Assembly: GCF_032062105.1 (NCBI RefSeq)
Contig: NW_026926059.1
Span: 124,001 to 188,000 of the forward strand
Reading direction: 5' to 3'
Length of the DNA: 64,000 bases
Source of the DNA: Saccostrea cucullata
Lineage: Eukaryota
The translations under genes and the position numbers were made by a program. Position 1 is the stretch's first letter; each line of letters opens with the position of its first letter. The notes under the pieces are model-generated. The model saw only the letters and a list, made by a program, of their open reading frames with translations, ran no database searches and had not been told where the DNA came from. Of this stretch, positions 27,601-64,000 are shown piece by piece.

Positions 27601-30600
27601 AACTTCAATCAAATAGCAAATAAACTTTCTAATTCATTTACACCTCATATAAATGTGCCCCCTTTTGTCAAACCTTTCTGGGCATGGATCCCAGGACATG
27701 TTCTAGATCCAGATCCACAGGGAAGTTTATCGTCTTTTTCCTCTTCTTTGAAGGTGTGGATATGTCTTCTGTTGTTTCCTTCTTAAAACCCTCCAACTTA
27801 ATCTGAAAAAAATATTCCACCACACTACTACATACAAGATAATTCTTATTAAAACCATAGGCCCCTGAGTCATGATGCTCACCTAAGTCACAATTCTCTT
27901 CCAAGTAATTTAACGAAAGGTAGAAACTTACTGACACAGGAGGCAAAACAAAATAGATTAAGTAAAGTGCATATTGTTTTCTAATTACTACTAACAATGG
28001 AAAGTGAGCAGGTATAATTCAACTTGTTCAAAACATGCATAAGATTTTCAAAATTAGCTTAATTAAAACTTTTTTGCTTAAGGTGTTTGGCTTCTGACAT
28101 TAAAAATAATTGAAAATTATTTTTTTCTTTTTTAATTGTAAGAATAAACATAATAAATTATTTTAAGCCAGGAAAATTCATATGAATATGATTTAATTTT
28201 CAAGCTATAGGTGTTCCTGACAAAGGGAGGTAATTCTCGCATTTTAGTAAAGAAAAAGACCAAATTTGTGTTCAACATATTTAATATTTATTTTAAACAA
28301 TGAAATGTTTTCAAATCATTCCAACCTTTTGCTATCTTTTAAAAGTAGTCATAGGGAATATAAATATTGATAAAATAAGAATGATAATTGATAGAAGATA
28401 AAATTTAATTCTTATCAAAAAGGACACACCCTCATACTAAAAAATGCCTTTTTTTCCTTTCACAGGGCTTATAAAATGAGCTTGGAAAATAAATTAGAAA
28501 TAATTAAAAAGTATTTTTTTTTCTATACATTTGTTACTAAGATAAAGTGCTTAAAAATGGTGTAAAAAATTGTATATCAATATGAGTTACTTTTAAAGAT
28601 ATTTTAACATGAATTTCCTCTGACCCATTTTTCTCAAATTTTGACCAGAGGAAATTCGGATTGATTCTGTTTGCCTCTTCCATGATTTTGGGGGATTTTC
28701 TATTTGCCTAAATGAATAAGTGTATTGAAACTCAGTCTTTTTCTTTAAAAGAAAAGGGACATTTCATTTTTTGGGGGGACTATTTAAGACTTAGGGGAAA
28801 GAGGGGATGGTGGGGGGGGGGGGTGGTTAATATCTATTTTCATGCCCACTCACATTACCTGAGGATAATTCTTTAATAGTTTGACTAATCATGGCTTTGC
28901 CTGTTCTGAGTTGAGAGAATTTTACAGACATTTCAAATATTTTTCTATGCATACTTTGCTCCACTTGTGGCCCATCCTTCCCCCAAGAAGTATTGAATAT
29001 AGGGTATGCAATGAAGCTAAATTTCACGTAAATGTCATCTTTTCTTCAGTGGTTCTTCAGAAGATTTTTGAATAATGCCACCAAAATTCTTAATTACCCC
29101 CCACTTCAAAAGGGCGAGACACTTCCTATGAACAAAGTTAAATCCCCTTAATTGAAATTGGGCCAGTTGGTCTTTCAAAGAAATAAAATATATCAAACTT
29201 TACACACCCCTGACAAAAGACCGATTGCCAGACAATCTTTGATCAGAAAAGCTCACTCGGGCTTCCGTGTCAGGTGAGCTAAAAACCACCACCTAGTAAT
29301 CATTTCACTATAAACGTTTCACAGCAAATTTCCAGTTATTGAAAATGAAGGGAATAAAAAAAAAGACTAAATGAATGTTTTGAACTACTAGTTGTACCAA
29401 TAACAGCTAGTTTAATTTGCGTCATGCAATGTAAATTTCTCTTGATTTCATTGTATCAAACAAAATGTTCTTTATTCAAGATGAAAAATGATCAACTATT
29501 TAACTTTATTGAAGTTTATTCAGATCCATGTTTCTTGTGATAGAGATCTATCAAATTGTTACCTTTACAAGTAACATACAACATTTTTATATACTGTAAA
29601 CATTAGATTATTTGTGCCTTTGACAGAAAACTGCTGTTGCTATATCAAGAACATCGCTAACTTTATGACCTGCGTATTTATAAGTACACAACAAAAATTT
29701 TGCTAGAAATCAAACCTAGCCCGATTGTTGAAAATAGATTACTGCCAAGTATAGGTCATACACAATATAAAACATTTACAGAATGTCCATTCATATTCAT
29801 TTGTGCATGTTTCAATTTAATATGCACATAGTCTTCTTCAATAAATATCAAAGAACACCTTTTAATTTTTCAGGTATGCTCAAAATATGGGTAATGAAAA
29901 TAAATTGTTGTCAATTTCTAAATAAGGATTTATTTTGAATGGAAAGAAAATGATTTGTTCAACTACAAACTACCTATAACAATAAACATTGAAAAAAACA
30001 ATAGTACATGGCATAATTATACCCCTGCTCTGAAGCACAGGGTTTATACTGTTTTTCTTTCTACACTTGTGTGTCTTTCTGTCAGTAACAAATTTTTGTC
30101 CAATTTTTCTCAGCAATCACTCATCATGCTCAATTGCTCATCACAGATGTTTTAAGTTTTAGCACACTCTTTCTTTAGACATGCCGTATGTTGGAATTGG
30201 TTTTAGACGAATCTGATGTCAACTTCCTAATTATCTGTGCATCTGTCTGTACCACAAATAGTAAATTTTTGTCACAGTTTTCTCCACAACTACTCATCAC
30301 AGTTGGAATTGGTTTTAGACGAATCTGATGTCAACTTCCTGTGTATCTGTGCATCTGTCTGTACCACAAATAGTAAATTTTTGTCACAGTTTTCTCCACA
30401 ACTACTCATCACAGTTGGAATTGGTTTTAGACGAATCTGATGTCAACTTCCTGTTTATCTGTGCATCTGTCTGTACCACAAATAATAAATTTTTGTCACA
30501 GTTTTCTCCACAACTACTCATCACAGATGCTTGAAATTTTTTAGACATGTAATATGGTTGGATTCATTTTTGTACGAATCCATTGTCAATTAACTTTGTT

Positions 30601-33074
30601 TATTCCTGTCTGTCCATATTCACATCAGATTGAGGGTATTACTAGTGAGCACTGGCTCACAGAAATCAAACAAACAAACAAACAAACAACCAAACAAACA
30701 ATAATATAGTTACATACAAAGAACATCATACAACTGCGTTACTGCTCAGATCTGAGAAAATCTGCAACAGAATCAATGATTTTTCTAGATTTTGTCACAC
30801 GCACACTGTTATCTGTTATCTCTGTCAGCACATCCTGTACTCCCTCCCTACCATTTCTGCGATAAGCCAGTTGTAAGTGTGATAAGGAGAGTCCACTGCT
30901 GGCAATCTTATTTGCCATTCCATTCGAAATCACCTTTTGGTCCAATAAAGGCTTTAGTGTGCTCATTAGACTTTTTGTTGTGTTCTTGTGATGGAATATG
31001 GCAAAGGCAGAGTTTGAAGTGAAAGATGCAGCAAGTTTGACTTCAGGGGAAGGTCCTGTATGGTCCAACAATCTCTTCAAGGCTAAGACATCCTGTAATG
31101 AGTCATGCGCACTGTATTTGTCTTGTAGAATTTCTTCGAAGAGGTGTAACTGTGAGTATGATGAAAGGTTTGGATGCGAAATTTTGAAAAGAGGTAAGGT
31201 ATCAATGAAACCAATGACTGCAGATGAGAATGCCTCCAAAATGTTTAATTTACTCAAAATGTTGAACAGCACAGGAAGGTCAAACACTTTGGAGTTGTGT
31301 CCAACTAGAACAGCATCTGACTCCGATTTCTTTATGAAGCCGATAAACTGGATCAGTGCATCCTTAATGCTGACTGTCTCAACTTCCTCATCATTGTGGT
31401 ACATTTTATTGTTGACTACTTTTATTCCAGTAATTTCTGTAGCTTTTGAGGACATTGGTTTTTCTGGAATGATGTATTTGTTGAAAACCTCATCATTTCT
31501 AACTGCAGACAACTGCACAATATGAGAATCCCTTGCTAAAAATAAAAAAACAAATAATTTAATTTTGATTGTAACGCATCATTTGATTGGATAAAAAATT
31601 AATCTAAATTGTATAATCTGGTTTGCTTACGTCACAATGACTTACATCAAATTGTATCAATCCGCTTGACGTTACGTTTAAAATATGAACTATTTGAAGG
31701 CATTATAAAGAGAAAATCTGTCTTGTTTTATATTCTTGATGATTGAAAATTAAATCATAAGGAGTGAATTAAATGGCAACCCAAATTATACTGCTACAAC
31801 CTGGGTTGGAGCAGTTTACGCTTTTTTATAAACCGCTTTGAGGTTTAGAAAGCATAAACTGCCCCAACCCAGGTAATACAGTATAATTTGGGTTGCTATT
31901 TAATTCATTCCGTAAGTAAATTCAAGTTTTTAAAATTAAAAGCATTAAAAAAAAATACATATAAAAATTGATATATTGTAAATGTATTATATTTAGCATG
32001 TATGATATTTGGAAGAAATTGACTTTTGAATAAGTAAGCGTAGATTTGATTTAGTGCATTTCTTCATTTTCTTCTTTATGTGTATATGTGCAAGACATTT
32101 AGCGTTGTACTTGATTTAGCGGTCCGCTATTAGAATACACAGCCAAATGTAATCCGTTTACAGTATGCATGATTTAAAAAATTTTGAAACATTATAATAA
32201 TAGTAACCCTCTTCCCCAAGACTTAACTCCTTCAAAGATGCTTGAATTCTTTCAGAATATGCAATTTCTTTTTAATCAGTGTCCTCAGAAGGAAGGGTAA
32301 AGTTTTGAAAGATATAAAACATGCTCAACTACTTGTACCAATACTGGAATTATGCAAGAGTCTCCATTTCTATTTGTTTTCTATGATAACTCTAGTATTA
32401 TTATTTCAAAATGCATACAAAAAAATACCGGAAGAGGGCCATAACCATCAGCATTGACTTAACATTTAAATCTAGGTTCTTACCGAGTCCAGTAGTTTCC
32501 AAATCAAAATAGATCTCTTCAGCATTTAAGAGCTGACTTGAAGGGAGATGATCATACTTTGGAATTGTTTTTGGAGCTGGAATTTCAACGATGTCAGAGG
32601 CCTGCTGGAGATCACATCCTGTTAAATAACTGATGCCTTCCCTTGTTTCTTTTGTAGAAATACTTTGAATTCTGTAAAGAAGATGTATACTGTAAAACAA
32701 ATGATTCTAAACTGAGGTCTTACTAAAGGCCTAGCAAAATAAACAATCACCTAATGTACAGCTAATGAATTAGGAGTTGTAAATAAATGAAAATCCTGAG
32801 CACATCGGCAAGGAAAGAGCACAAAGTAGACCAGAATAGAAAAGTTATGGTACATGTAATTTACTGAAGGGGGGGGGGCTTATATTTTATCACTACTTAA
32901 GAATGCCTCCATATCAATACAGCATATAACTTTTTTAACATTTTGTTCGTATATATTACTTAGTAATAATTTGAATTTGATTCCCCACCGTTTCCCTCCC
33001 TACCACAAAGGATCAGGATTGAAACAAATTTAAATCTTCAATTTTCATTTCCATATGACTAAACATAGCTTCTC

Positions 33075-33107
<33 letters not shown>

Positions 33108-36100
33108 ATTTTTTCCCTTTATTTTCCTATGTAAAACTTTGATCCACCATGTATGATTTGAAAAAAAAATTAATTCTACTTTACCTGAGGATGCTTCCAT
33201 ATTAATATCACCAATCATAGCTTTGCTATTCTTGAGAATTTTTTTAAAAATATATTGTACTGTAAAATGCAATTGTGGCCCCGCCCTATCCCTGGGAGTC
33301 ATGATTTAAACAATCTAGAATCTACACTACCTGAGGATGACTTCATATCAATATCACTTATCATGGCTTTGCAGTCCTTGAGAAGAAGATTTTTAAAGAT
33401 TTCAAATTCTCTATATATTCCTGTGTAAAACTTTGATTGGCTATGTGGTCCCACCCTATCCCCCAGGGTCAAGATTTGAACAAACTTGAATCTACACTAC
33501 CTGAAGATGATTCCATATGAGTTTCATCTTACCTGGCCCAGTGGATACTAACTTTGTAGCAAGTTTGGTTGAAATTGGCCTAGTTGTTCTTGAGAGAAAG
33601 ATGAAAATGTGAAAAGTTAATGACAACAGATACATTTTTATCAGTAAAGCTCACTTGAGCTTTCCGCTAAGGTGAGCTAAAAAAACTGGGTATGTAGGTA
33701 GGTAAAATTTTTATTTTAAGATTGCAGCAAAGCAATATGCCCTCCCTTCTTTGAAAAAAATATTTATCAAACCATGCTATTTATACAAGCATACCGTAAA
33801 TCTTTGGTGATTCAGAAAACAAATCTTAGTAACATGCAAGATATTAATTCCCACTTAAATTCATACTTATCATCATTCACTTGTTCTTGGTTTATTTTCA
33901 TTTTTGAGGTTGTCAAAAGGTTTTTTACACCTGACAAATGACAATCAAAGTATACTAGTACGTACTTCCTGGCTTTCAATTCTCTCCTTCTCCTTTTAAA
34001 TTTTTGTGTCACTGAAATGGCCTTCTGTCGCTTTCTTTGTAAATCCCTCAGAATGCACTGTCGTCGAGTATAGTAGCCAGGAGAGAGGCCCAATTTCTTG
34101 TTAACCTTTAATAAGGATAAAAGAATCTATTATGTACAACTACAATGTACATACATATACAATACAATTTGCTTTTGATTAAAATTTGCAGAATTTTCAA
34201 ATGTAAGAGATAACTTGAGTGGTTCAACTCATATATGACACAATAAGCATGAAAAAATAAAAATTTACAAACCTTTACAAGATATTTGTGTCCAACATTT
34301 TTCTGGGCTACACATGCAGCAACTCTATATCTGAGGCTTGAAGAAGAGCTGTAATGATGGGTCTTTGGGGCTTTTGCAGACACCATTCTGTGAAAACTCT
34401 CATTCGACTGTGTGCTTCCTAAGCATGAAAGACGATCAGAATGACTTGCATATGAACTGAAGACTTCTTTCAGATCATCCTGAAGGAACCTATCTTTCAG
34501 GGGTTTTCCATGTGGAAGTGACTTGTACTTCAGGTTAGGGTTGTTAATGAAGTTGCACCACCTTGAGGAGCAGTGTTGGTGATCTCCAAATATGTGTAAT
34601 GGAATTGATGAAAGGTCTTTGATTTGAGAAGCATTTCCTTTTCCCTGTGCTATGGAGTAACTGAAGCATTTCTGAATGTACTTTATCACAGACAAAGTTA
34701 GAGTTGAATGTTTTTTCTTTAAGGTAAACAAAGAGTTTGTAAACAGTTTCTTTAGATGATTTTTATCAGACAACTTCTTAATATCAGCATTGACATTAGC
34801 TTTCAGTCTTGCAATAGTGGTAGAGTCCTCATCTCCAATGATTCCATCAATGGTTATTCCTTTACTTTTCTGTAGATCTTGGACCATCTCAATAACCATA
34901 TCTGCCTCCATGGCCTTTGAACTACCCTCCCAATTCTTTGAGCACTCATGGGCTGCTGGATTCTTGTTGGTTGATTCAGCTACACTGCATACTCTGCAAT
35001 TCTTAGACCTCAGAGAGTATGACAATACTTTGTCGGAGAGAGGACCAACCATGGAACAATGACCTGAAAAATTACAAATTAGAAAAACTGTATAACTTAT
35101 AGATGTATTCGTTGTTTTTATTAAAGCATTTTTCATGCATTTCTTAACTTAATAAAATGTATGTCTTAATACTTTGGCAAGGAAAATCATACTCGATCAC
35201 TGATGTTACATGTATGCATTTGGTAATAACCTTTAACCCCTTTAGTCAGCAATGAACCTGTGCGTCCAGTGCACTATAGCATAATTGGGTCAAATATTTA
35301 TTTTTCACGAGGGGTGCTGTATAAATAATGGAAATCGTTCAACTTTAAAAAAGTAAACAGTTGCTTTAAAACGTGTTTGCAGAATGCAATAGGGACCAAA
35401 TTCCTACTTCTTTGAAGTTAAGTGTTCTAAGTATTGACAATGCTTTGGTAAATAATGTTTCTAATAAGTGTCGTTAAAAATTGGTTGCGTGCCATAGAGC
35501 GATTAGCGAATACGCTAACTGTGTAAAATCACCTAATATTTTAATATTTTGATTTGACTCATTATGAGTCTTAATGATTTTTCTCCTATATATATTTCCG
35601 TGTAAACATTATATCTTTTTTTGGCTCCATTATCCCACCTTGGGTCCATATTTCGAACAAAACTGAATATGCTTTACCTGCATGAGCAACATAACTATTC
35701 ATGGCTGTTCTTTAGAAGAATATTTTACAATTTATATGGACAGTTGAACTTTGAGATATGTGCCTTTCTAAATTTATTGCATCTGTTTGCATACATATTT
35801 AATGGAATCAAGTCCTAAGCAAACTTAATGCATAGTTTATGTTGGGCACAAGCGGAAAGTAATCACTCTAATCATCAATATTTTTTTTTATTTTCCTAAA
35901 ATTTGTCTACTGTAGAAGCATAAATTTTCGTGGGCATAAAATTTTTTTGTTCTGACATCAAAAATAATCTCGTCGTTGTTTTAAAACTAACCCTAGGTCT
36001 AAAAAAAAATATGTTTGTTTCCTGTAACCCGACCGACCCATTCAAATTACCCCCCGGGTGAATTTTTTTATTGACAAATGGCAAAACTTCGTTTGATCAA

Positions 36101-39100
36101 TCAGCTGATTCCATTTATTAAAAAAAGAAAATTAGCTTGTAGCTTAACTTGAGACATAAAATATGTCAACTTAGTTTACATCTAAGTTTGATTAGTTATA
36201 AAGAGTAATCATTATTATAACAACAATTTCCCCCTACAACTTTCTGAAGATCGTTTTCTGCCGCTAGGTAGCCATTTTGGATGCCATGTTGGGTGTCCAC
36301 TGTAGATATGACACCTGGTATATTGAATCCAGGGATGTTTGACAATTCATAAGAAAAAAAAGAATCCAGACCTACCGACCCTTAATTTTTTTTTAATGTT
36401 ACAGGAAACAAACATATCTTTTTTAAAGCCCTATTCAATATATAGTCATATAAAATTTCGTGTGGGATTTAATTTTGTTGAATTTCCCCCCCCCCCCCCC
36501 CCCCCCCCGAATATTTGTGCTTTTACAGTATTTTTACCTGATAAACTATCATATGTCTTTCCGCTACCCCGTTTTTGCCATCCAGCATCTACAGCAACAA
36601 CTAGTCCATTTTCGTTCATCTCTCTGAAAAATAGATAAATAACAGACATCAGTTATTAATTAACTGTGAACCTGTCTTCTTTAGAACACCCCCTAATGTG
36701 CATAACATTCTGCATATTTATCAATACAAATTATACTGTACATGATTAAACCTTATATTTATCAGTATATCAGATTCTATTAACTTGATCACTATCAATT
36801 ATTATTAGGTATTCCCTATGATAATCATTTGGGGATCAAAACTAAAACACAAGGCTCTTGGGGCTTGGGCCACAATACTCTAGGAAGTCACTGTCTCTGT
36901 CCAATCTAATTAAAACTTTTTAATTTTTCCTTTTTTAATTCATTCTAGGAATGAATTTAATAGCTACCCAAGTTATACTGTATATCCTGGGTTGTGCCAG
37001 TTTTGGCTTTCTATACAGCGAGGCTTTCATTTCAAAGCAGGTTACACTAATATAACTTGGATAACTATGAAGTTAATTCCTTATAATTTAATTCTCCATC
37101 AATAAGTAAAGAAAATATAAACTTAATAAGACAATTTTTCCTTCAAAAATGCATGCAATTAGTACATACATGTATCTTATATGTAAAATTAAATGGGTTG
37201 TTATGTTTGTGACATACATGTTAGTAATTGTGACTTAACCAACACAGGTTATACCATATGACCACTACACATGTATGCTGGACACCCATTGATCTGATCA
37301 GAAAAGCTCTATTGCGCCTTTGGCTCATTTGAGCTAAATAGTGAGATTTAAACTGAATTTATATTGTTTACACACTCATTCATCATTTCCAGTTCCTTCT
37401 GCAAAGCATCAGACATAGACTCTGCAGCAATGTCTTCAACAGCTCTGCCTATCTCTTTCTGTCTTTTGTCCAGCATGGCATGGCTTACAGGTGGTATATT
37501 CAGCTCAGAAAGGAGACTGTTGACTTGCGTTGCACCAATACCAACATGTACAATTGCTGTAAATACAAATTCATAAATGTAAAAAAGAAATCAATCTAAT
37601 CACTTTAAACAAGAAGCTTGTGAAATACAACACTCACCTTAGTCTCATTTATTTTCTCTCTTTATTACCAGAAATTAAAAATAGAACCCATACTTTTAAC
37701 AAACTAAACCCCTAGGGGTAATGGCAACAAAACTGGAATTGATCTACAAAGAAGCTCTTGGATTCTAGAGGTTTTGTAGGGTAAAAATGAGGTCTACCGA
37801 TTAGACATCAGAAACATTTCCTTGACAAAACTATGTTTTATGCTAACTTTGACAATTTCAGGAGGGGTTCGTGCCGGGTGTGCCCCCCATTAAGTCTGCC
37901 ACTGATTATATCAATTTATAGATACATATACCTATTTACTGGCTATGAGGACAAAAGCAAGTTTATTGTCCCCCATGACAGCAACAATTTCTCAAGGTGC
38001 GTCCAAGTTGCTGTTGAGGGGGGGGGGGGGGGGACAACAAACTTGCTTATATTGGAATAGACAGGTAAAACTCAATCAGGCTCTTGTGACTTGACAATAA
38101 TAAATATACATGTAACTGATGTATGGGATGTGTAGGTTAAACTTCTTACCTGCTGAAAACTTTGTATTTACATCCCACACTCTTCCATGTTTTTTCCCTG
38201 TTTTTACATGGTTAATATGATTACACTTTGTATTGCTGCAACAGACCTGAAATGTTTATGTAAAATCAATGAATTCCTAATTACAGGTCACTGTTCTAAA
38301 TTCATTCACCATTAATGAAATCAAATGCTTGGGAAAAAAGAATTTAAATATGCATTACTTCAAATTATTTCAAAGAAAAAAATGTAACATCTTTCAAAAC
38401 TAAAAATATGGATATATGGAATACTGCCTGTTTTATATGGAGTAAAATTCAAGGAAAAACCTTTCAAGGTTGTTTTTATACAAACTGTGCAAAAATTGGT
38501 GAGTTCATACCTTTAACAAAGAAGCTAAACCATATGTCAACACAGAAATAGTGTGTGAAAGTTGTAATGGTAAGCCACATTTACAACATCCCCGCAAGCC
38601 CTCAGCTAACACTCCAAGTTCTACTACTCTCCTCCCCTCCTTCCAATCCTTAGATGTAGTCACTTCTTCCCCATCAACCACCTCCTCTCTTTCCAGTATA
38701 TTCAAATTTGGCAATTCTATGAATAATTAATAAAAATTATCACCATTACACATTCTTTATTATCTACTGTAACACATCCTGACTAGTTGACAGTTTAGAT
38801 ACACTATGACTTACTAAATTCCAAGAACCAGTTTTCAAAATAATTCATTGTGCCGATATACAACATATTTTTCCATATACCGATATTTCTCAAGATATTC
38901 TGAAATCAATCTTAAATATGATCTACTAAATTCTTTTACTCGACATTTGCTTGGAACCTGGTCATTCACATGTAAACAGACGGTGTATGAGGTGCAGCGA
39001 AGAGTTGCATAGCATTTGCAAGATCTTTCAACATTTTAAAGTTGATTTCTTACTCCAGATTGTAAGGTTAAGTAGTCTGTATTAATAATAATAAGTTAAA

Positions 39101-42100
39101 ATCTGGATCAACAACTACACCGCCATTTTGATTATGAATGTAAAAGAAGCTATATGGTTGAACAATTTTTTCCTGTAATGCATTATCATGTCAGATTATA
39201 TACCTTTCTATTTTCAAAACAATTAGGCCTAGACCGCTTACATTTTGTTTGTGACTTAGTAAGATCATATGATCCAATTAAAGAAAAATCATGTAAATCT
39301 CAAATTCAAATGAGCAAATATTCATTGAGTTTAGAACAGACTTTAGAGAAAATTTGTCCTGTCGTTCCCGCTTAACAATTAGTGTTGGGCCCATTGGCAA
39401 GCTGATCGATGTCAATTAAAAAAATTTAGGTCAATTTCGGAATTGATTTCATAATATCTTAATAAGTATAAAGAATTACGGAATGAAATTTGAAGGAATG
39501 AAGATTGTTTATATATGGATAGATATGGATAAACAGTAAATTTGTAAAGCATTCAATTTAAAAGAATTTTATTGGGGAAAGTAGGTACCCTATGAAAAGA
39601 GTTCCATACCTTTATTTTTTTTAACACCTCAATTTTTTTTCTAAGTGATCTAAAGGCCTGTGGGTCAAATGAGTATATCTTTCATCACGTGCAGTGCATT
39701 AAAATAAAATACAGTAATTATCTTTGATTAGTATTGTCATGTAAGGTAAGACATCAGCAAATGTAATTTTTTTTTTTGTAACAGCTAGGCTTAGTATATA
39801 TATATTTTATTGAAATCCACATATGACATCATGTATAGTTAAGTTTATTATCATCAAATATGATTCAAATTTCCATGTTGCATTTTGATTACAATAGGCC
39901 ACGTGGTTTTCAATAAAATACCCCCCCCCCAAAAAAAAAAAATTATATTTTAAAAACTTTGTTGTCAATCAGATGAAATTGTTTTTATCATTGAAATATA
40001 TCGTTGAAAATTCAATTATATACTTGATAAAAACAAGTTTTCAATGTCTTAGTTATGTCATTCGTCTGTCATGTTGTTTTTCAATGAAATATTGAGAAAA
40101 ATTCAATATCTTCTCTTTTGGTGCACATCTTTAACTATTATAAATTTTTTTTAAATAGCTACACGAAGTCATAGTTCAAAAAGTCTTTAGATTGGACCTG
40201 GTATATAAAATGAACATCAACAAATTCATGTACCTCCCTTTAATATTTCTAATAGACCTATGTGTAATCATGGTAATTTAGATGCAGATATGAAAACGAG
40301 TCTTTTAGATTACGTATTTTACATGTACAAACCGTGATCGTGATCAACGCTGACAGGGGTTGCACTGGCGGAGTAATTGTGGTCTGTAAGGATAGCTCCC
40401 CTAATCCATCGAGTCAATTGCCCTGCAGATACTTTATCATATCTCTCCTTCTGCTTTTTCGAGACGAACCCATGGCGTCTGTACTTTGGTTTCACCATCT
40501 CAACCAAAGTTACCGCGCAGACCTTGACTTCTCGTCTGCTTTTTGTTTACATTATCGTAATCCGGTTCACATCCGCGAAATGTAAAATGCTTAGTATATG
40601 TTTGTTTTCTGGCATAAAAAATCGTTATTATGTTACTTTCTATGGATGATGATAATAATTATTTGTAGAAACTATTAATTCTCTGCCGTATTGAATTCTT
40701 TATTATAACGACATTCAGACCAATATCCGGCAGTTCGAGTTGCGCGGTGAATTCAATTTCGTCAGAAGCGAAACACCTTAAATTAATTAAAATTTTTGCT
40801 TCCCTCTTGATCTGTCTTACCCGTCCATCCCCGGTGATAGTCCCCACAAAGTTGACAGGACACCTCTCTCTGTCTGCTATCTTCTGTACCAGGCCCTGGT
40901 CCCCGGGGCTGATCAGGAGGGCGTTACTCTCCTGGTACTCGGCCCCCCACAGCTCTAGGACACTGAGGGTCGGGTCGCCCAGCTGAAACTTGGAGGCCTG
41001 AATGAGAGCACCTGCTGGTTCAGCTATCTCCTTCAGGACATTACCTGTAAATTAAACTTATCATTAACACGACTATGACATCTTAACAACCCAAAGAAAA
41101 TGATAAAGAACTTCATTAAATATAGCTGAATCTTCAATCTTTTTGGTTAAATGAACAATGAAAAATTTTTCTTCATTTCTGCTGTTGGCTACTTGTTGGC
41201 TTAAACCAATGCATTTTTGCAAAGTGAATAAAATTTTGAAAGTGAATCACTTTCAGTTAGACCCTTCCTTTGTTATATATTTATGTGACCTCTCTTTTTA
41301 TAAAATATTAATGTAATTTAAGACTCAATCTCACACTAGATCTCACCGTTTCCCCCTGCCCCCTGGTCGTGGACACTAGCTATGGGGTTCCTCTCCCTCC
41401 TCTCTATACACCCCCTGATGACACGGTTCAGTTTCTGTTCCATCTCTGGATCCCCTCGCTGGACAGCTCCGAAGTCGAGTTCCTCCTTATTGTCCCCCTG
41501 GACCTGGACAGAGGAGGCAGCCCCTCCCCCCACACCGATTCTGTAGACGGGGCCACCTACTTTGGTCACCAACATCCCTACAAAATCATACTCATTCAGA
41601 GTTGTACCATACGTCCACTACAGTGATGATGAATGCATGTACTTCTTTAATGTCAATATATAGTAAAACATTCTATTTTTATCCCAATTTGACATTCATT
41701 TCCCCAGAAGGTACACACTGAACTTTTTTTTCACAGATTCTTCACCTGGTTGAGGTACATCCTTTTTAACATGGATGTCTTCCATCTGTCCAATCCCCCC
41801 GCTGAACATGATGGGTTTGATATACTCCCTCCTCTCTCCCCCTCCGTCCGTCATACCAAAGGACCGAGCGAATCCTGCCAGTACTGGTTCTCCAAACTTG
41901 TTCCCATAGTCTGAGGCTCCGTTACTGGCCTCTATGGCTATATTTAGAGGTGATGCAAAGTTACCTGGGTAAACATAAGATGGGTCCTCCCAGGGTTGGA
42001 TGTAGCCTGAAAATAGTTTGGCTACTAGTGAAAATCTAAGCAAAGTTTTTATAAGAACTTTTTTATCTCTTAAATGGAGTTTTTAAAAGATTCTCTTATC

Positions 42101-45100: not shown

Positions 45101-48100
45101 TGACTACAAATTTCATTTGCAGACAGAGGTGGTAATTCATCTCAATGTGACAGATAAAGATAATGCTCTGGATTTTCTTCAGGAGGAAAGCTAATTAATC
45201 TCAAGGGACTCATTGCAGTATTCCGTTTACAATGGGAACATATTCAGCAGTTATCTCTCTTTGCCAATTCATTCTTATATAAAGTTAAGGAATCTACCCC
45301 ACCACCCCAGCTCCAAACCAGAGGACATAGAGAAACAAACTTAGCATCAAAATATGTCTTTCTGCCTACTGAACTACCATACCAAATTTGAACTTATTTG
45401 GTCAACCATAAAAAAAATTATTAGGAAAAAACAGAAAATTTGTGGACGGAAGAATGACAGACGGACAGACGGACAGACAGAGTGATTACTATAGGGCACC
45501 CGCAAATCCTTGCGGGGCCCTAAATATTTCACTATAAATGAAACTTTAAGAAAGCAATGGGGTATGATACAAGTATCCAGAGAAATTCCAATTGCAGCTA
45601 CTCAGCCCTCCTTACATCAGGGTCCTGTGTCAACTTGTTGCTGTGGAATCCCTGAAAAGTTTCATTTGATATCTTACCAGCATATATTTCATTAGTTGTT
45701 TTTTTTTTGTTTTTTTTTTTGGAAGGGGGGGTCATAGACCTACAGCAATGGGTTGATATAGGTCTCTTGATGTTGTGAAGATGCTTCACAGCTGTACATA
45801 CATATGACTGTATTTTTATGGTGTTGATGTCTGTAAAGAATGGTTACTTCTCTGACTGGGGAGATACTGGGCATTTACCAGATAGTCTGGCGAGTTTCCT
45901 GTTAGAGTGGACAATTACCAGTTAGAGTAATGTTACCTGTTAGACTGGGTAGTTAGAGTAATAAGTTACCTGGGGTCAACTCCAATATAAGGGTATGTAG
46001 TTCCTATGCGGAAGCTTGTACATATATAAAAGTAGTGATTCGGTTCTATTGTTGACCGTGGACAGTTGACAGTTGACATTTAACTATTTCTACTGTCGAC
46101 CGGGGACAGTTGACAGTTGACATTTAATCATTTCTACTGTCGACCAGGGACAGTTGACAGTTGGTTGGTCTCGCATTTATAACTGTGATAAGGGTTAGTC
46201 TTGCATTCATAAGTGTGACTAGGGTTAGTCTCGTATTAATAGCTGTGATTAGAGTTGGTCTCGCATTAATAGCTGTAATTAGGGTTAGTCTCCCATTAAT
46301 AGCTGTGATTAGGGTTAGTCTCGTATAAATAGCTGTGATTAGGTTAGTTTCGTATAAATAGCTATGATTAGGGTTAGTTTCGTATAAATAGCTGTGATTA
46401 GGGTTAGTTTCGTATAAAAGCTGTGATTAGGGTTAGTTTCGTATAAATAGCTGTGATTAGGGTTAGTCTCATATAAATAGCTGTGATTAGGGTTAGTTTC
46501 GCATTTAAAGCTGTGATTAGGGTTAGTATTGCATTAATAGCTGTGATTAGGGTTAGTTTCGCATTTATAGCTGTGATTAGGGTTAGTTTCGCATTTATAG
46601 CTGTGATTAGGGTTAGTTTCGCATTTATAGCTGTGATTAGGGTTAGTGTCCCCAGTCGAGAGAAGAACATATAGAAAGTGTCAACTGTCAACCGTCGACC
46701 TGTCCCCTGTCGACACTAGAACACAAGGGAAGTGTCAACTGTCAACCTGTCCCCGGTCGACACTAGAACACAAGGGAAGTGTCAACTGTCAACCTGTCTC
46801 CGGTCGACACTAGAACACAATGGAAGTGTCAACTGTCAACCGTCGACCTGTCCCTGGTTGACAGTATATCATATAGAAAGTGTCAACTGTCAACCGTCGA
46901 CCTTTCCCCAGTCGACACTAGAACACAAGGGAAGTGTCAACTGTCAACCGTCGACCTGTCCCCGGTCGACACTAGAACACAAGGGAAGTGTCAACTGTCA
47001 ACCGTCCTGTCCCCAGTCAACAGTATATCATATGGAAAGTGTCAACTGTCAACCATCGACCTGTCCCCGGTCGACACTAGAACACAAAGGAAGTGTCAAC
47101 TGTCAACCGTCGACCTTTCCCCAGTCGACACTAGAACACAAGGGAAGTGTCAACTGTGAACCATCGACCTGTCCCCAGTCGACAGTAGATCATATGGAAA
47201 GTGTCAACTGTCAACCGTCGACCTGTCCCCGGTCGACACTAGAACACAATGGAAGTGTCAACTGTCAACCGTCGACCTGTCCCCGGTCGACAGTATATCA
47301 TATAGAAAGTGTCAACTGTCAACTGTCGACCTGTCCCTGGTGGACACTAGAACACAAGGGAAGTGTCAACTGTCAACCGTCGACCTGTCCCTGGTTGACA
47401 GTAGATCATATGGAAAGTGTCAACTGTCGACCTGTCCCCGGTCGACACTAGAACACAAGGGAAGTGTCAACTGTCAACCGTCGACCTGTCCCCGGTTGAC
47501 AGTAGATCGTATGGAAAGTGTCAACTGTCAACCGTCGACCTGTCCCCGGTCGACACTAGAACACAAGGGAAGTGTCAACTGTCAACCGTCGACCTGTCCC
47601 CGGTTGACAGTAGATCGTATGGGAAGTGTCAACTGTCAACCGTCGATCTGTCCCCGGTCGACACTAGAACACAAGGGAAGTGTCAACTGTCAACCGTCGA
47701 TCTGTCCCCGGTCGACACTAGAACACAAGGGAAGTGTCAACTGTCAACCGTCGACCTGTTTCCGGTCGACAGTAGATCATATGGAAAGTGTCAACTGTCA
47801 ACCGTGAACCCATCCCTGGTCCCTGTGTGGAATGTAGAAATATTTAACTCCATAACATTACTACAATATACAGTGATGTATGAATATGTTAATATTGTTT
47901 CAGTCAAAGTACTACTTTATCCTTATATTGGAGTTGAGCTGTTACCTGTTAGACTGGGTAGTTAGAGTAATGTTACCTGTTAGACTGGGCCAGATCAAAA
48001 CACTCCACATTGGTAGGGTTTCTTTTTATCTTCTCTCTAAATAACTCCGTGTAATAATCCAAATCCCAGTTATCGAAAGCCAACCCTGTTAAGAGACAGA

Positions 48101-61016: not shown

Positions 61017-64000
61017 ATGGCCCTTATAGAAGAAGATAGCATAGAGTTTTTAGAAGATCAAATCGTCCCAGACCAAGACGATTTGTTTCTACCACCAACC
61101 GAAGCTGCCTGGAATGTAAGTCGACGAAAATTTGTTCTCTTATTTTTCGATCTGAAGAAAAAAAGAAAAAAAAATCGGTTAAAGTTAAATATATCATTAT
61201 CATATGCTTCTTTCTGTAGAATGATGTAATCTTTATATTACGGTCACAATGTATGTACATGTATATTATAAAAGAAAAAGATATTGAAAAAAAGTCAGTT
61301 AAACCTTCTTCACATATGTCATTCCAAAGGAGATTATGAATGGCGGAGTAATATATGTTACCTAAACCCCCATTTTACTGAATGCGTGATTCGGTCGCAG
61401 ACTGCTGGAAATTTGCGTCGATAAGACCGGAAGATAATCGATTTTAGTTTGCTCTTTGTGCCATTGCAACAAGGAAATCAGAAATCGTTAGTGTATTATT
61501 CTGTTGCGAACTAAAGTTGGCAATAAATTTTAAAAAAACACACACACATGGGATTAAGTCAGGGGCTCGATTCGGGTCAGTTGGCTTGAATGCCTTCATC
61601 ATGTGATCTCTATCTGCCTATTTGCTCGTCTGTGTATTGCGAAAGCACCCGAGGGTGCATTAGTCAGCCTCGTTATCGCGACACAAGATAATCTACCGTG
61701 GAGGCAACCCATACCAGAAAATTATTATCTAAATCTGCCAAAAATTCCATTGATTTTCTTAGAAACAAATCGTTCTAATTCCCTTTTCCGTATTTACGGA
61801 ATAAAACTAAAGAATATTTCTTTACTAGCGTATTAAGTGTATTTTTAAAGTTTATTCTGACAATCGATTTTAATTAACCTCGGCATTGAAATGAGATGTG
61901 AGATTTGATTGGCTGTCGATAAAATCTCATGGACGTTGTGAACTTTTCATTCATCGTTTCTGCGTTGCCAAGAATTCATTCATAAATCGCCAAACGCGTA
62001 GGTGTCTCGTAAAGCTCTCGCGGGCTTTATTGATTTACTTTAACAAACATGTTTTCAAACGAATGCTGTATATTGGGGTTAGTCATCCGTTACAAAATAG
62101 GTTGATTACAATATATATATATATACTGAACTTAATTAACACTATAATAATAACTGTTTATAAAACTCTTGGAAACTGAAAACACGGTATCACAGTCTTA
62201 ATACGTTTAGACTTAAGTGTAATAAACACAGTTCATTTTTTTTAAACGAAATGTCTTTTTCTACACAGGTAAAATCCGGGGATTTCGACAGGTACCTACA
62301 CCTTACCGACCAAGGCCCTGCTGCCAAGAAGCTGCGCCGTGAAAGCTCGTCACTTGTCGACGAGTTTTTCCAGGATGACTTCAAAGGCACCCCGGAACTC
62401 AACAATGCCAAACACATTGTTAACCAGGGGCTGCTGGGAAGGAAACGATTCCTGGACCTGAACAACCTGAGAACCGGGCTGTTCAACTCCCCGAAGTCCG
62501 ATGTCTTCAGAAGAGAAATCTCGCCCTTGGCCGAGGAGGTCCGAGAAGACGGTTTACAACGAGTGGGTCTCATCAAGTCACCGGCCAAGACGACGAAAAT
62601 TGACCTTAGTGAAACGATGATGGACCCCGCCTCTATGATGAGCGGGGGTTACGTGGATCTGCGAGAACAGAGTAAACATGTGGACGATTCAATCTGGGAG
62701 GACGTGAAAGACAGTATTGATATGGTGAATTCTAAAGACTCAAATTCAAATGACCCCATAGTGATTAAACAAGAAGATTCAGACATTTCATTTAAACCAG
62801 CATGCCAGTTTCAAAATTCTAGAATCCCTTCTTTTGAGAACATTTCTGTGAAAATTGAACCATCCACTTCAAGTTGTCTTTTGGCGGGTTCCAACTCGAC
62901 AGAGAGCTTGACCACTAGGCCTAAGTCTCTCTCTGTGTCCCAACAACAGATGATGTTCTCTCAATCACCCTCTCCTGTCGCCCAATACATGGCACAGTTA
63001 AATAGTATTGCAATGAACAAATCCCATATGACGTCATCGACATTTTCGACGGCAACGCCCCCACATATGGTCCCAGTATTCCTCCCTCCAACGCCCCCTA
63101 ATTCGGAGCCCAACAGTCCTAGTCAAGACGTGCCCATGAGGCGCACTCCCCCTCCGCCGTACCCAGGGGTTCAGCGACATCAGAGCTACAACACCCTCAA
63201 CATCCAGCCCATTCCCTACACCCCAGTCCCCCCTAGGACCTCCAACAAAGTCCAGGCCACTCACCCAGGGTGCTCCACAATCAAGTACAACAGAAAAAAT
63301 AACCCTGACCTAGAAAAAAGAAGGATCCATTTCTGCGAATTTCCAGGTAATTATTTTAAAAGTTTACAAATCAAACGGCTCTTTACAATAGGATATAGTC
63401 TGCAAATAATTCATATTTCATACAAAAGTCATGACAGTGGTTGAGGACCCGAGGAAGCGATTCAGTAACTTTCAAGAGCTTTCAACATTTGTAACAGACC
63501 ATTAATGAGCTTTATAATTCTAACCAAACGGAAACGACTTTTTTGCTATCTTTGATTCACTCGGCGAACAACGAAACGATTTGAATCAATCAATGGAGAG
63601 ATGCATTTCCGCTGAATCCTCTATTGGGACTCTGTAGCGAAAGCTTGTGTCTAGAAATCAATATTTTTCCATTGCAAAACTATATATCTAGAAGTACAAA
63701 GCCGTGTGATCAAGTCGCATCGATTTCTTTGTCTGCTAGAATTTTTTATAGGTAAATTGGATCTAATTTGTTTTATTTCTTGTTTTTCGCAGGTTGCAGA
63801 AAAGCCTACACAAAAAGCTCACATCTGAAAGCTCACCAGAGAATTCACACAGGTAAACAGACTTCATAAATAAAACTTAGAAATAAACTTTAAAGACAGA
63901 TAAACAAACAGACAGACAAAAAATTAAACCAGCAAATATTAACAGTACTTTTATTTATTCTATAGGTGAAAAACCATACAAATGTCATTTCCAAAACTGC
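61017..64000 (+). CDS. KLF5: Krueppel-like factor 5; exons 61017-61115, 62269-63346, 63793-63852, 63966->64000
   Basis: [18 protein letters not shown] and [47 protein letters not shown] match the KLF5-type pre-finger region and first C2H2 finger. Confidence 0.9.

What the first reader, a model, noticed from the sequence alone, without database searches (positions are those of the whole stretch)
28082..40777. Intact 12.7-kb Kolobok-type transposon encoding a transposase-DEDDh exonuclease fusion
Seen: TTAA duplication, 17-bp GG-starting TIRs (one mismatch), and nine exons that splice into one uninterrupted ~883-aa ORF. The ORF track shows only fragments of it. The DDE triad appears complete (VAVDAGW, IGDEDS, SNESFH), followed by a basic linker and complete ExoI/II/III motifs (DLE, HN...FD, HDSLQD) plus a C-terminal helical tail. 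Established: TTAA TSD with purine-purine termini is the Kolobok signature, and DEDDh enzymes include TREX1, the PML-like exonucleases and Exuperantia. Inference: a possibly still mobile element carrying its own 3'-5' exonuclease, which could process ends, destroy cytosolic DNA by-products or act against competing elements. It may also be related to the origin of PML-like exonuclease domains. Kolobok subgroups with accessory nucleases have been reported, so novelty must be checked.
Basis: partly seen in the sequence, partly recalled or inferred. Interest (0 to 1): 0.9.

Follow-up and report, generated by a model that had tools for sequence, protein, structure and literature searches.

The report
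Oyster transposon carrying PML-like exonuclease
This is a young, multi-copy cut-and-paste jumping gene of an already described group (KolobokD) whose enzyme is fused to a DNA-chewing exonuclease; what appears unreported is that this exonuclease is the closest relative of, and shares an intron with, the fish Plex9/PML exonucleases that vertebrates use against retrotransposons.

Summary
Observation confirmed: TTAA duplication, 17-bp GG-starting TIRs and nine exons giving an 883-aa transposase-DEDDh-PML_C ORF, inside a PFAS intron of an oyster (database models name Saccostrea cucullata). About 25-30 copies with unlinked flanks are ~99% identical in coding sequence; 7 of 10 fetched are intact. A spliced public contig joins exons 5-9, so the fusion is transcribed. 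dN/dS is about 0.17 against the S. echinata family, exonuclease included. The window copy has a private one-codon deletion. It is not a new kind: Kojima and Bao 2022 (PMC9587614) named DEDDh-carrying Kolobok elements of molluscs KolobokD, and dozens of such fusions are in databases. The scan noted similar elements twice elsewhere in this genome. What remains is evolutionary: the exonuclease is far closer to fish Plex9 (rmsd 1.2 A, profile E 1e-51 to 1e-59) than to Exuperantia or TREX, carries a PML_C tail, and has a phase-1 intron at the same codon as three fish Plex9 genes. This fits a transposon origin of the PML exon-9/Plex9 module, which I found in no paper, but the tree did not fix the direction (AU p=0.27) and no PML sequence was obtained.

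The parts
28078..28081 (.). TTAA target-site duplication, 3' side of element
28082..28098 (-). 3' terminal inverted repeat (17 bp, starts GG)
30190..30529 (.). 112-bp tandem repeat in the 3' non-coding part; copy number varies between copies
30739..31535 (-). Exon 9: most of the DEDDh exonuclease (ExoII, ExoIII) plus PML_C/SAM-like helical tail; stop codon
   Evidence: (PML_C 4e-26, RNase_T 4e-10)
31536..32483 (-). Intron 8: phase 1, directly after the ExoI motif; same codon and phase as in fish Plex9 genes
32484..32671 (-). Exon 8: linker and ExoI motif (D612, E614)
33069..33760 (.). High-copy interspersed repeat nested in intron 7
   Evidence: contig depth above 100,000
33966..34105 (-). Exon 7: basic helical linker, probable nuclear localisation signal (14 K/R in 36 aa)
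   Evidence: NLS is inference
34273..35063 (-). Exon 6: transposase core (CCHC finger, second D, DxxH, second finger, catalytic E); lacks one codon relative to the family
   Evidence: (PF20700 2e-50)
36538..36623 (-). Exon 5: first catalytic D (D229)
37376..37556 (-). Exon 4: N-terminal part of PF20700
38150..38246 (-). Exon 3: Cys-rich N-terminal domain
38511..38716 (-). Exon 2
40333..40498 (-). Exon 1 with start codon; predicted disordered; DHNY motif at aa 39-42
40761..40777 (-). 5' terminal inverted repeat
40778..40781 (.). TTAA target-site duplication, 5' side
40821..41044 (-). Host PFAS (FGAM synthase) exon upstream of the insertion; donor at 40820
27674..27802 (-). Host PFAS exon downstream of the insertion; joins the upstream exon in frame

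Best explanation
An autonomous, recently amplified KolobokD-type cut-and-paste DNA transposon. Shown: TTAA-specific insertions at many unlinked sites, short GG TIRs, one spliced mRNA for a transposase-exonuclease fusion, purifying selection on both domains, all catalytic residues present. Inferred: the DDE domain binds the TIRs, excises the element and inserts it at TTAA. The tethered Plex9-like 3'-5' DNA exonuclease, carried into the nucleus with the transposase, most likely trims DNA ends that transposition creates (broken donor flanks, or excised and abortive intermediates), easing repair or limiting damage signalling (about 55% for this role). The SAM-like tail probably adds nucleic-acid binding. 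The window copy is a slightly damaged member of a short subvariant sitting in a PFAS intron.
For: TSD/TIR; 25 contigs hold both ends, about 30 ends of each kind at 95-100%; 29 different flanks in 30 ends; CDS 99.1-99.6% identical, 7/10 other copies intact; 20 synonymous vs 19 non-synonymous changes on 576/2076 sites, Fisher p=4e-5; dN/dS 0.165 overall, 0.10 transposase, 0.175 exonuclease against S. echinata; spliced contig across exons 5-9; RefSeq model P0248 equals my splice of copy C13027 at 884/884 aa; exonuclease D-E-D-H-D kept in 35-36 of 36 full-length fusions; fold matches zebrafish Plex9.1, Z 24.5, rmsd 1.2 A, an enzyme shown to degrade ss and dsDNA (PMC10123124); KolobokD definition.
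Against: No empty-site allele found. Expression in raw RNA is very low (0-3x) and the spliced contig comes from a run only guessed to be RNA and from another copy or allele. No assay of either activity. A 3' exonuclease would harm the 3'-OH ends needed for strand transfer, so its target must be something else or be shielded. KolobokD membership could not be checked on the published tree.
Confidence: 0.85

Rival explanations
1. Same element, but the exonuclease works away from the transpososome: it degrades cytoplasmic or reverse-transcribed DNA, restricting competing retrotransposons or damping DNA sensing, as fish Plex9 and gar PML do.
For: Closest characterised relatives (Plex9, PML CDE) restrict LINE-1 and clear micronuclei (PMC10123124); closest fold is Plex9.1.
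Against: The domain is fused in frame behind a basic NLS-like linker; no separate exonuclease-only transcript was seen, though reads were too few to exclude one.
Confidence: 0.3
2. The EXO-SAM module is mainly a nucleic-acid-binding unit (like the pseudonucleases Exuperantia and mammalian PML PXL) and catalysis is secondary.
For: EXO-SAM arrangement shared with Exu and PML; both bind UG-rich RNA without cleaving (PMC13659232).
Against: All five catalytic residues are nearly invariant across 36 fusions of 30-55% identity.
Confidence: 0.1
3. Two separate genes (transposase and a passenger exonuclease), or a domesticated host gene, mis-joined by the reader.
For: Junctions 33966-32671 and 32484-31535 rest on one public contig; raw reads did not cover them.
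Against: Contiguous spliced contig; identical RefSeq models in two Saccostrea species and the same eight introns in Mytilus; a related family here has both domains in one 690-aa intron-free ORF (35, 67); TIR/TSD and dispersed copies.
Confidence: 0.02

Closest known systems
KolobokD lineage (Kojima and Bao 2022, PMC9587614)
   Same: Kolobok DDD/E transposase with both zinc fingers, TTAA TSD, RR..YY termini, DEDDh exonuclease, mollusc host. Core motifs read like Kolobok-1/-7/-9_CGi and Kolobok-1_ADi in the paper's Data S5 (by eye).
   Different: The held text does not say that the nuclease is fused, does not mention the PML_C/SAM-like tail, introns or size, and lists only Exu, TREX and ERI1 as relatives. 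This Saccostrea family is 12.7-21 kb, nine exons.
Fish Plex9 and the C-terminal DEDDh domain (CDE/PXL) of PML (PMC10123124, PMC13659232)
   Same: Closest solved structure (Z 24.5, rmsd 1.2 A, 33% identity); profile E 1e-51 to 1e-59; phase-1 intron at the same codon in three fish; PML_C tail shared with PML (Pfam 4e-26; Atlas PML cluster TM 0.64 over residues 1-260).
   Different: Host genes without transposase; the Plex9 proteins seen lack the SAM-like tail; PML has an RBCC N-terminus and is catalytically dead in amniotes.
Exuperantia (Drosophila EXO-SAM pseudonuclease)
   Same: EXO plus SAM-like layout (Z 19; Atlas TM 0.78).
   Different: 17-19% identity, catalytically dead, host RNA-binding protein.
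KolobokE, KolobokP, Kol0 and Dada elements with accessory nucleases
   Same: Related DDE transposons carrying an extra nuclease or accessory protein.
   Different: PD-D/ExK, His-Me finger, KolX or DEDDy (inside the transposase) instead of a C-terminal DEDDh; no long terminal direct repeats and no second gene here.

Membership tests
Kolobok superfamily | TTAA target-site duplication | tested here: met
   (all 10 fetched copies; note the search pattern itself included TTAA); also S. echinata, Mytilus, Haliotis and Nasonia relatives found by protein
Kolobok superfamily | 5'-RR...YY-3' termini with short TIRs | tested here: met
   GG...CC, 17-bp TIR
Kolobok superfamily | DDD/E transposase with C/DxxH motif | tested here: met
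   D229, D323, E467, D345xxH348; PF20700 2e-50
Kolobok superfamily | Zinc finger between C/DxxH and the catalytic E | tested here: met
   H402, H407, C410, C415, conserved in 34-35 of 36 relatives
KolobokD | CCHC zinc finger downstream of the first D | tested here: met
   C268, C271, H284, C286 (definition)
KolobokD | Encodes a DEDDh (DnaQ) exonuclease similar to Exu/TREX | tested here: met
KolobokD | Transposase groups with the KolobokD clade of the published tree | not testable with these tools
   Figure 4 is not held and Data S5 has no row labelled KolobokD; closest rows judged by eye only
KolobokP | Long terminal direct repeats and His-Me finger nuclease | tested here: not met
   no long terminal direct repeat; no such ORF (3, 15)
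Kol0 | Second protein KolX | tested here: not met
   no second coding ORF seen in the element or in the extra segments of longer copies; not searched with a KolX profile
Plex9/PML-CDE exonuclease family | Closer to Plex9/PML CDE than to TREX or Exu | tested here: met
   PML itself only through Pfam and Atlas
Plex9/PML-CDE exonuclease family | 3'-5' DNase activity | not testable with these tools
   catalytic residues present; no assay
Domesticated-from-KolobokD origin of Plex9/PML | Vertebrate clade nested inside transposase-fused exonucleases on a rooted tree | tested here: inconclusive
   fused sequences are one group in 0 of 200 bootstrap trees, but AU p=0.27 does not reject their monophyly; outgroups distant; no PML, Exu or TREX rows

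The most novel reading that the evidence does not exclude
The exonuclease-SAM module that appears abruptly in jawed vertebrates as PML exon 9 and as the Plex9 genes was captured, intron included, from a KolobokD transposon by a TRIM gene, much as P2X7 took its ballast domain from Kolobok KolX. A transposon enzyme would then have become a host restriction factor against retrotransposons, and KolobokD would preserve the catalytically active EXO-SAM ancestor.
Probability: 0.45. Interest if true: 0.75.

Novelty: new member of a known kind. Interest (0 to 1): 0.4.

Why it matters
As an element it adds a young, probably still active family to a lineage known from one paragraph of one paper, so the open question of why some DNA transposons carry a 3'-5' exonuclease can be tested with an intact copy. 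The larger point is evolutionary: PML and Plex9 have no known source before jawed vertebrates, and recent PML work asks for diverse EXO-SAM proteins. The shared intron, fold and PML_C tail name KolobokD as a candidate donor and give a direct test. It also means that many mollusc database entries called 'protein PML-like' are probably transposon fragments (inference).

Tried and rejected
Empty-site allele: the flank occurs once in the assembly. Non-autonomous MITE family: end searches give only about 30 hits each, nearly all on full-length copies. Hidden second gene in the 1.15-kb and 0.29-kb segments missing from this copy: longest open frame 105 aa. Vertebrate PML sequences: two homologue searches aimed at them returned none, so PML is absent from the trees. 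Published KolobokD sequences: not labelled in the supplements. Haliotis gene mapping stopped early; only the ExoI intron was read directly. Full-length fold search returned only exonuclease hits, so the transposase fold was not placed. Literature searches found no paper linking PML/Plex9 to a transposon; the library lacks most subscription journals and Repbase Reports. The joined spliced model was not sent to any search tool: database searches went exon by exon by reference, and full-length work used stored database proteins. The joined model was used only inside local scripts.
Full report
Observation. The ends are as reported: TTAA at 28078-28081 and 40778-40781 and 17-bp inverted repeats starting GG with one mismatch. 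Nine minus-strand exons with GT..AG introns splice into 883 codons without a stop. The catalytic set is complete: D229, D323 and E467, a DxxH motif, a CCHC finger after the first D, a second finger before the E, and exonuclease residues D612, E614, D704, H762, D767. Exon by exon, Pfam gives Mutator-like transposase PF20700 (2e-50), RNase_T, Exu_RNase_H_like and PML_C (4e-26). The element lies 39 nt inside an intron of the host PFAS gene, on the same strand; the flanking exons join in frame and the empty intron would be 318 nt. Database models 98-100% identical to the protein are labelled Saccostrea cucullata.

Mobility and age. The TIR pattern has 63 matches in the genome against 4 for the control. 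About 30 copies of each end are 95-100% identical and 25 contigs hold both ends; 29 of 30 ends read have different flanks. Ten fetched copies are 13.2-15.1 kb, all bounded by TTAA; their coding sequences are 99.1-99.6% identical to this one, seven are intact and three are broken by indels. Changes among copies are skewed to synonymous sites (20 on 576 vs 19 on 2076, p=4e-5). The same family, with the same TIRs and eight introns, is in S. echinata: dS 0.24, dN/dS 0.165 overall and 0.175 in the exonuclease. The window copy belongs to a short subvariant that lacks two intronic segments, and it has a private loss of one codon (E394) and four private substitutions, none at a catalytic residue. No empty site was found. 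So the family transposed recently; whether this copy is still competent is not shown.

Fusion. A 1927-nt public contig covers exons 5, 6, 7, 8 and 9 end to end with all four introns missing; the exon 6-7 joint is also in a second run's contig and in one raw RNA read. The contig carries the family's extra codon, so it comes from another copy or allele, and its run is only guessed to be RNA. Raw RNA depth is 0-3x. Junctions 1-4 were outside the stretch laid, but a RefSeq model (P0248) equals my splice of copy C13027 at 884 of 884 residues. A related family in this genome has both domains in one 690-aa ORF. Twenty-nine of the first 185 homologues hold transposase, exonuclease and tail in one chain, and about 65 of about 118 exonuclease hits outside this family have a transposase hit just upstream (counted by eye, lower bound). 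Relatives in Mytilus, Haliotis and Nasonia are also bounded by TTAA and GG TIRs.

How it most likely works. Shown: structure, copies, splicing, selection. From established knowledge: Kolobok transposases belong with hAT, MuDR and P (DxxH group; PMC3706591) and cut and paste. Inferred: the fused exonuclease is an active 3'-5' DNase, since its five catalytic residues are kept in 35-36 of 36 fusions and its model (pLDDT 97) superposes on zebrafish Plex9.1 at 1.2 A, an enzyme shown to degrade ssDNA and dsDNA. Because it is tethered behind a basic linker, I favour action on ends made by transposition, at donor flanks or on excised intermediates (about 55%), over a role against other elements or DNA sensing (about 30%) or mainly binding (about 10%). 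None of this was tested.

Comparison with what is known. Kojima and Bao 2022 (PMC9587614) define KolobokD as Kolobok families of molluscs, arthropods and cnidarians that encode a DEDDh exonuclease and carry the CCHC finger, and propose that it degrades DNA intermediates. Every defining feature that I could test is met; placement on their tree could not be tested because the figure is not held and no supplement row is labelled KolobokD. The element is therefore a new member of a known kind. Two first-stage notes describe similar elements elsewhere in this genome.

The PML link. The KolobokD paper lists Exu, TREX and ERI1 as relatives. A profile of the exonuclease scores Plex9-type chains at E 1e-51 to 1e-59, Exu at 1e-15 and TREX at 1e-10; structure agrees (Z 24.5 vs 19 vs 18). 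The tail is PML_C, and the Atlas lists a chordate PML cluster at TM 0.64 over the whole module. Intron 8 falls in phase 1 right after the ExoI motif. It is at the same codon and phase in Plex9 genes of Electrophorus, Anguilla and Muraenolepis and in elements of S. echinata, Mytilus and Haliotis; Nasonia and some other families lack it. From memory and untested: mammalian PML exon 9 also begins just after the degenerate ExoI motif. PML is reported to appear first in jawed vertebrates (PMC10123124), whereas the fused module is diverse in molluscs, cnidarians, annelids and arthropods. Neither PML paper mentions a transposon source, and the Kolobok paper gives a precedent in KolX and P2X7. Against over-reading: the tree puts fish Plex9 among transposase-fused sequences in the best tree and all bootstrap trees, but the AU test does not reject their monophyly (p=0.27); the outgroups are distant and no PML, Exu or TREX sequence was available. 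An old host EXO-SAM gene captured by Kolobok and kept by vertebrates explains the same intron. I put domestication from KolobokD at about 45%.

Limits and rules followed. The joined spliced model was left out of all database searches; these went exon by exon by reference, and the full-length fold used a stored database protein (P0248; pLDDT 83.5). The joined model was used only in local scripts. No N stretch lies in the element.

Verdict. Real, intact in frame, recently active, and already described as a lineage: interest 0.4, carried mostly by the testable PML/Plex9 origin hypothesis.

Noticed in passing
G000 contigs C828, C6931, C7297, C10455, C11755, C13623, C15800, C18719, C19927, C20521: A second young KolobokD-like family with transposase and exonuclease in one intron-free 690-aa ORF, at least ten near-identical copies; the genome holds 145 or more exonuclease hits of many families.
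   Followed up: partly
P0110 / L053:8001-10448, also P0101, P0088: EXO plus PML_C module fused to an N-terminal region of about 480 aa with no Pfam, Atlas or Kolobok-profile match; possibly another element type carrying the same module.
   Followed up: partly
P0048, P0080, P0174 (Anabrus simplex); P0218 (Homarus americanus): Tandem arrays of two to four exonuclease domains in a cricket, and a GST-exonuclease fusion model in lobster: candidate independent host co-options.
   Followed up: no
window 40373-40384 (exon 1, aa 39-42): DHNY motif in the disordered N-terminus, also present in the Mytilus relative P0224; resembles the HCF-1-binding motif D/EHxY (own knowledge, untested).
   Followed up: no
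window 31758-31941 and 36918-37081: Two related short hairpin (MITE-like) repeats nested in introns 8 and 4.
   Followed up: no
window 37751 and 36925: Most copies carry 1.15-kb and 0.29-kb intronic segments here that this copy and C7047 lack; no long ORF in them.
   Followed up: partly
window 539-1519 (-): 326-aa ORF with DUF3504 and QRICH1 domains, suggesting a Crypton-type tyrosine-recombinase element (family assignment from own knowledge).
   Followed up: partly
window 46732-47965: GC-richer tandem repeat array inside a PFAS intron that yields repetitive ORFs.
   Followed up: no
window 62251-63444 (+): 397-aa Ser/Pro-rich ORF ending at the start of what looks like a Kruppel-like-factor zinc finger; no Pfam hit in the part scanned.
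   Followed up: partly
G000 C8765, C23634, C18140: Related transposase exons occur as close inverted pairs or tandem repeats on these contigs.
   Followed up: no
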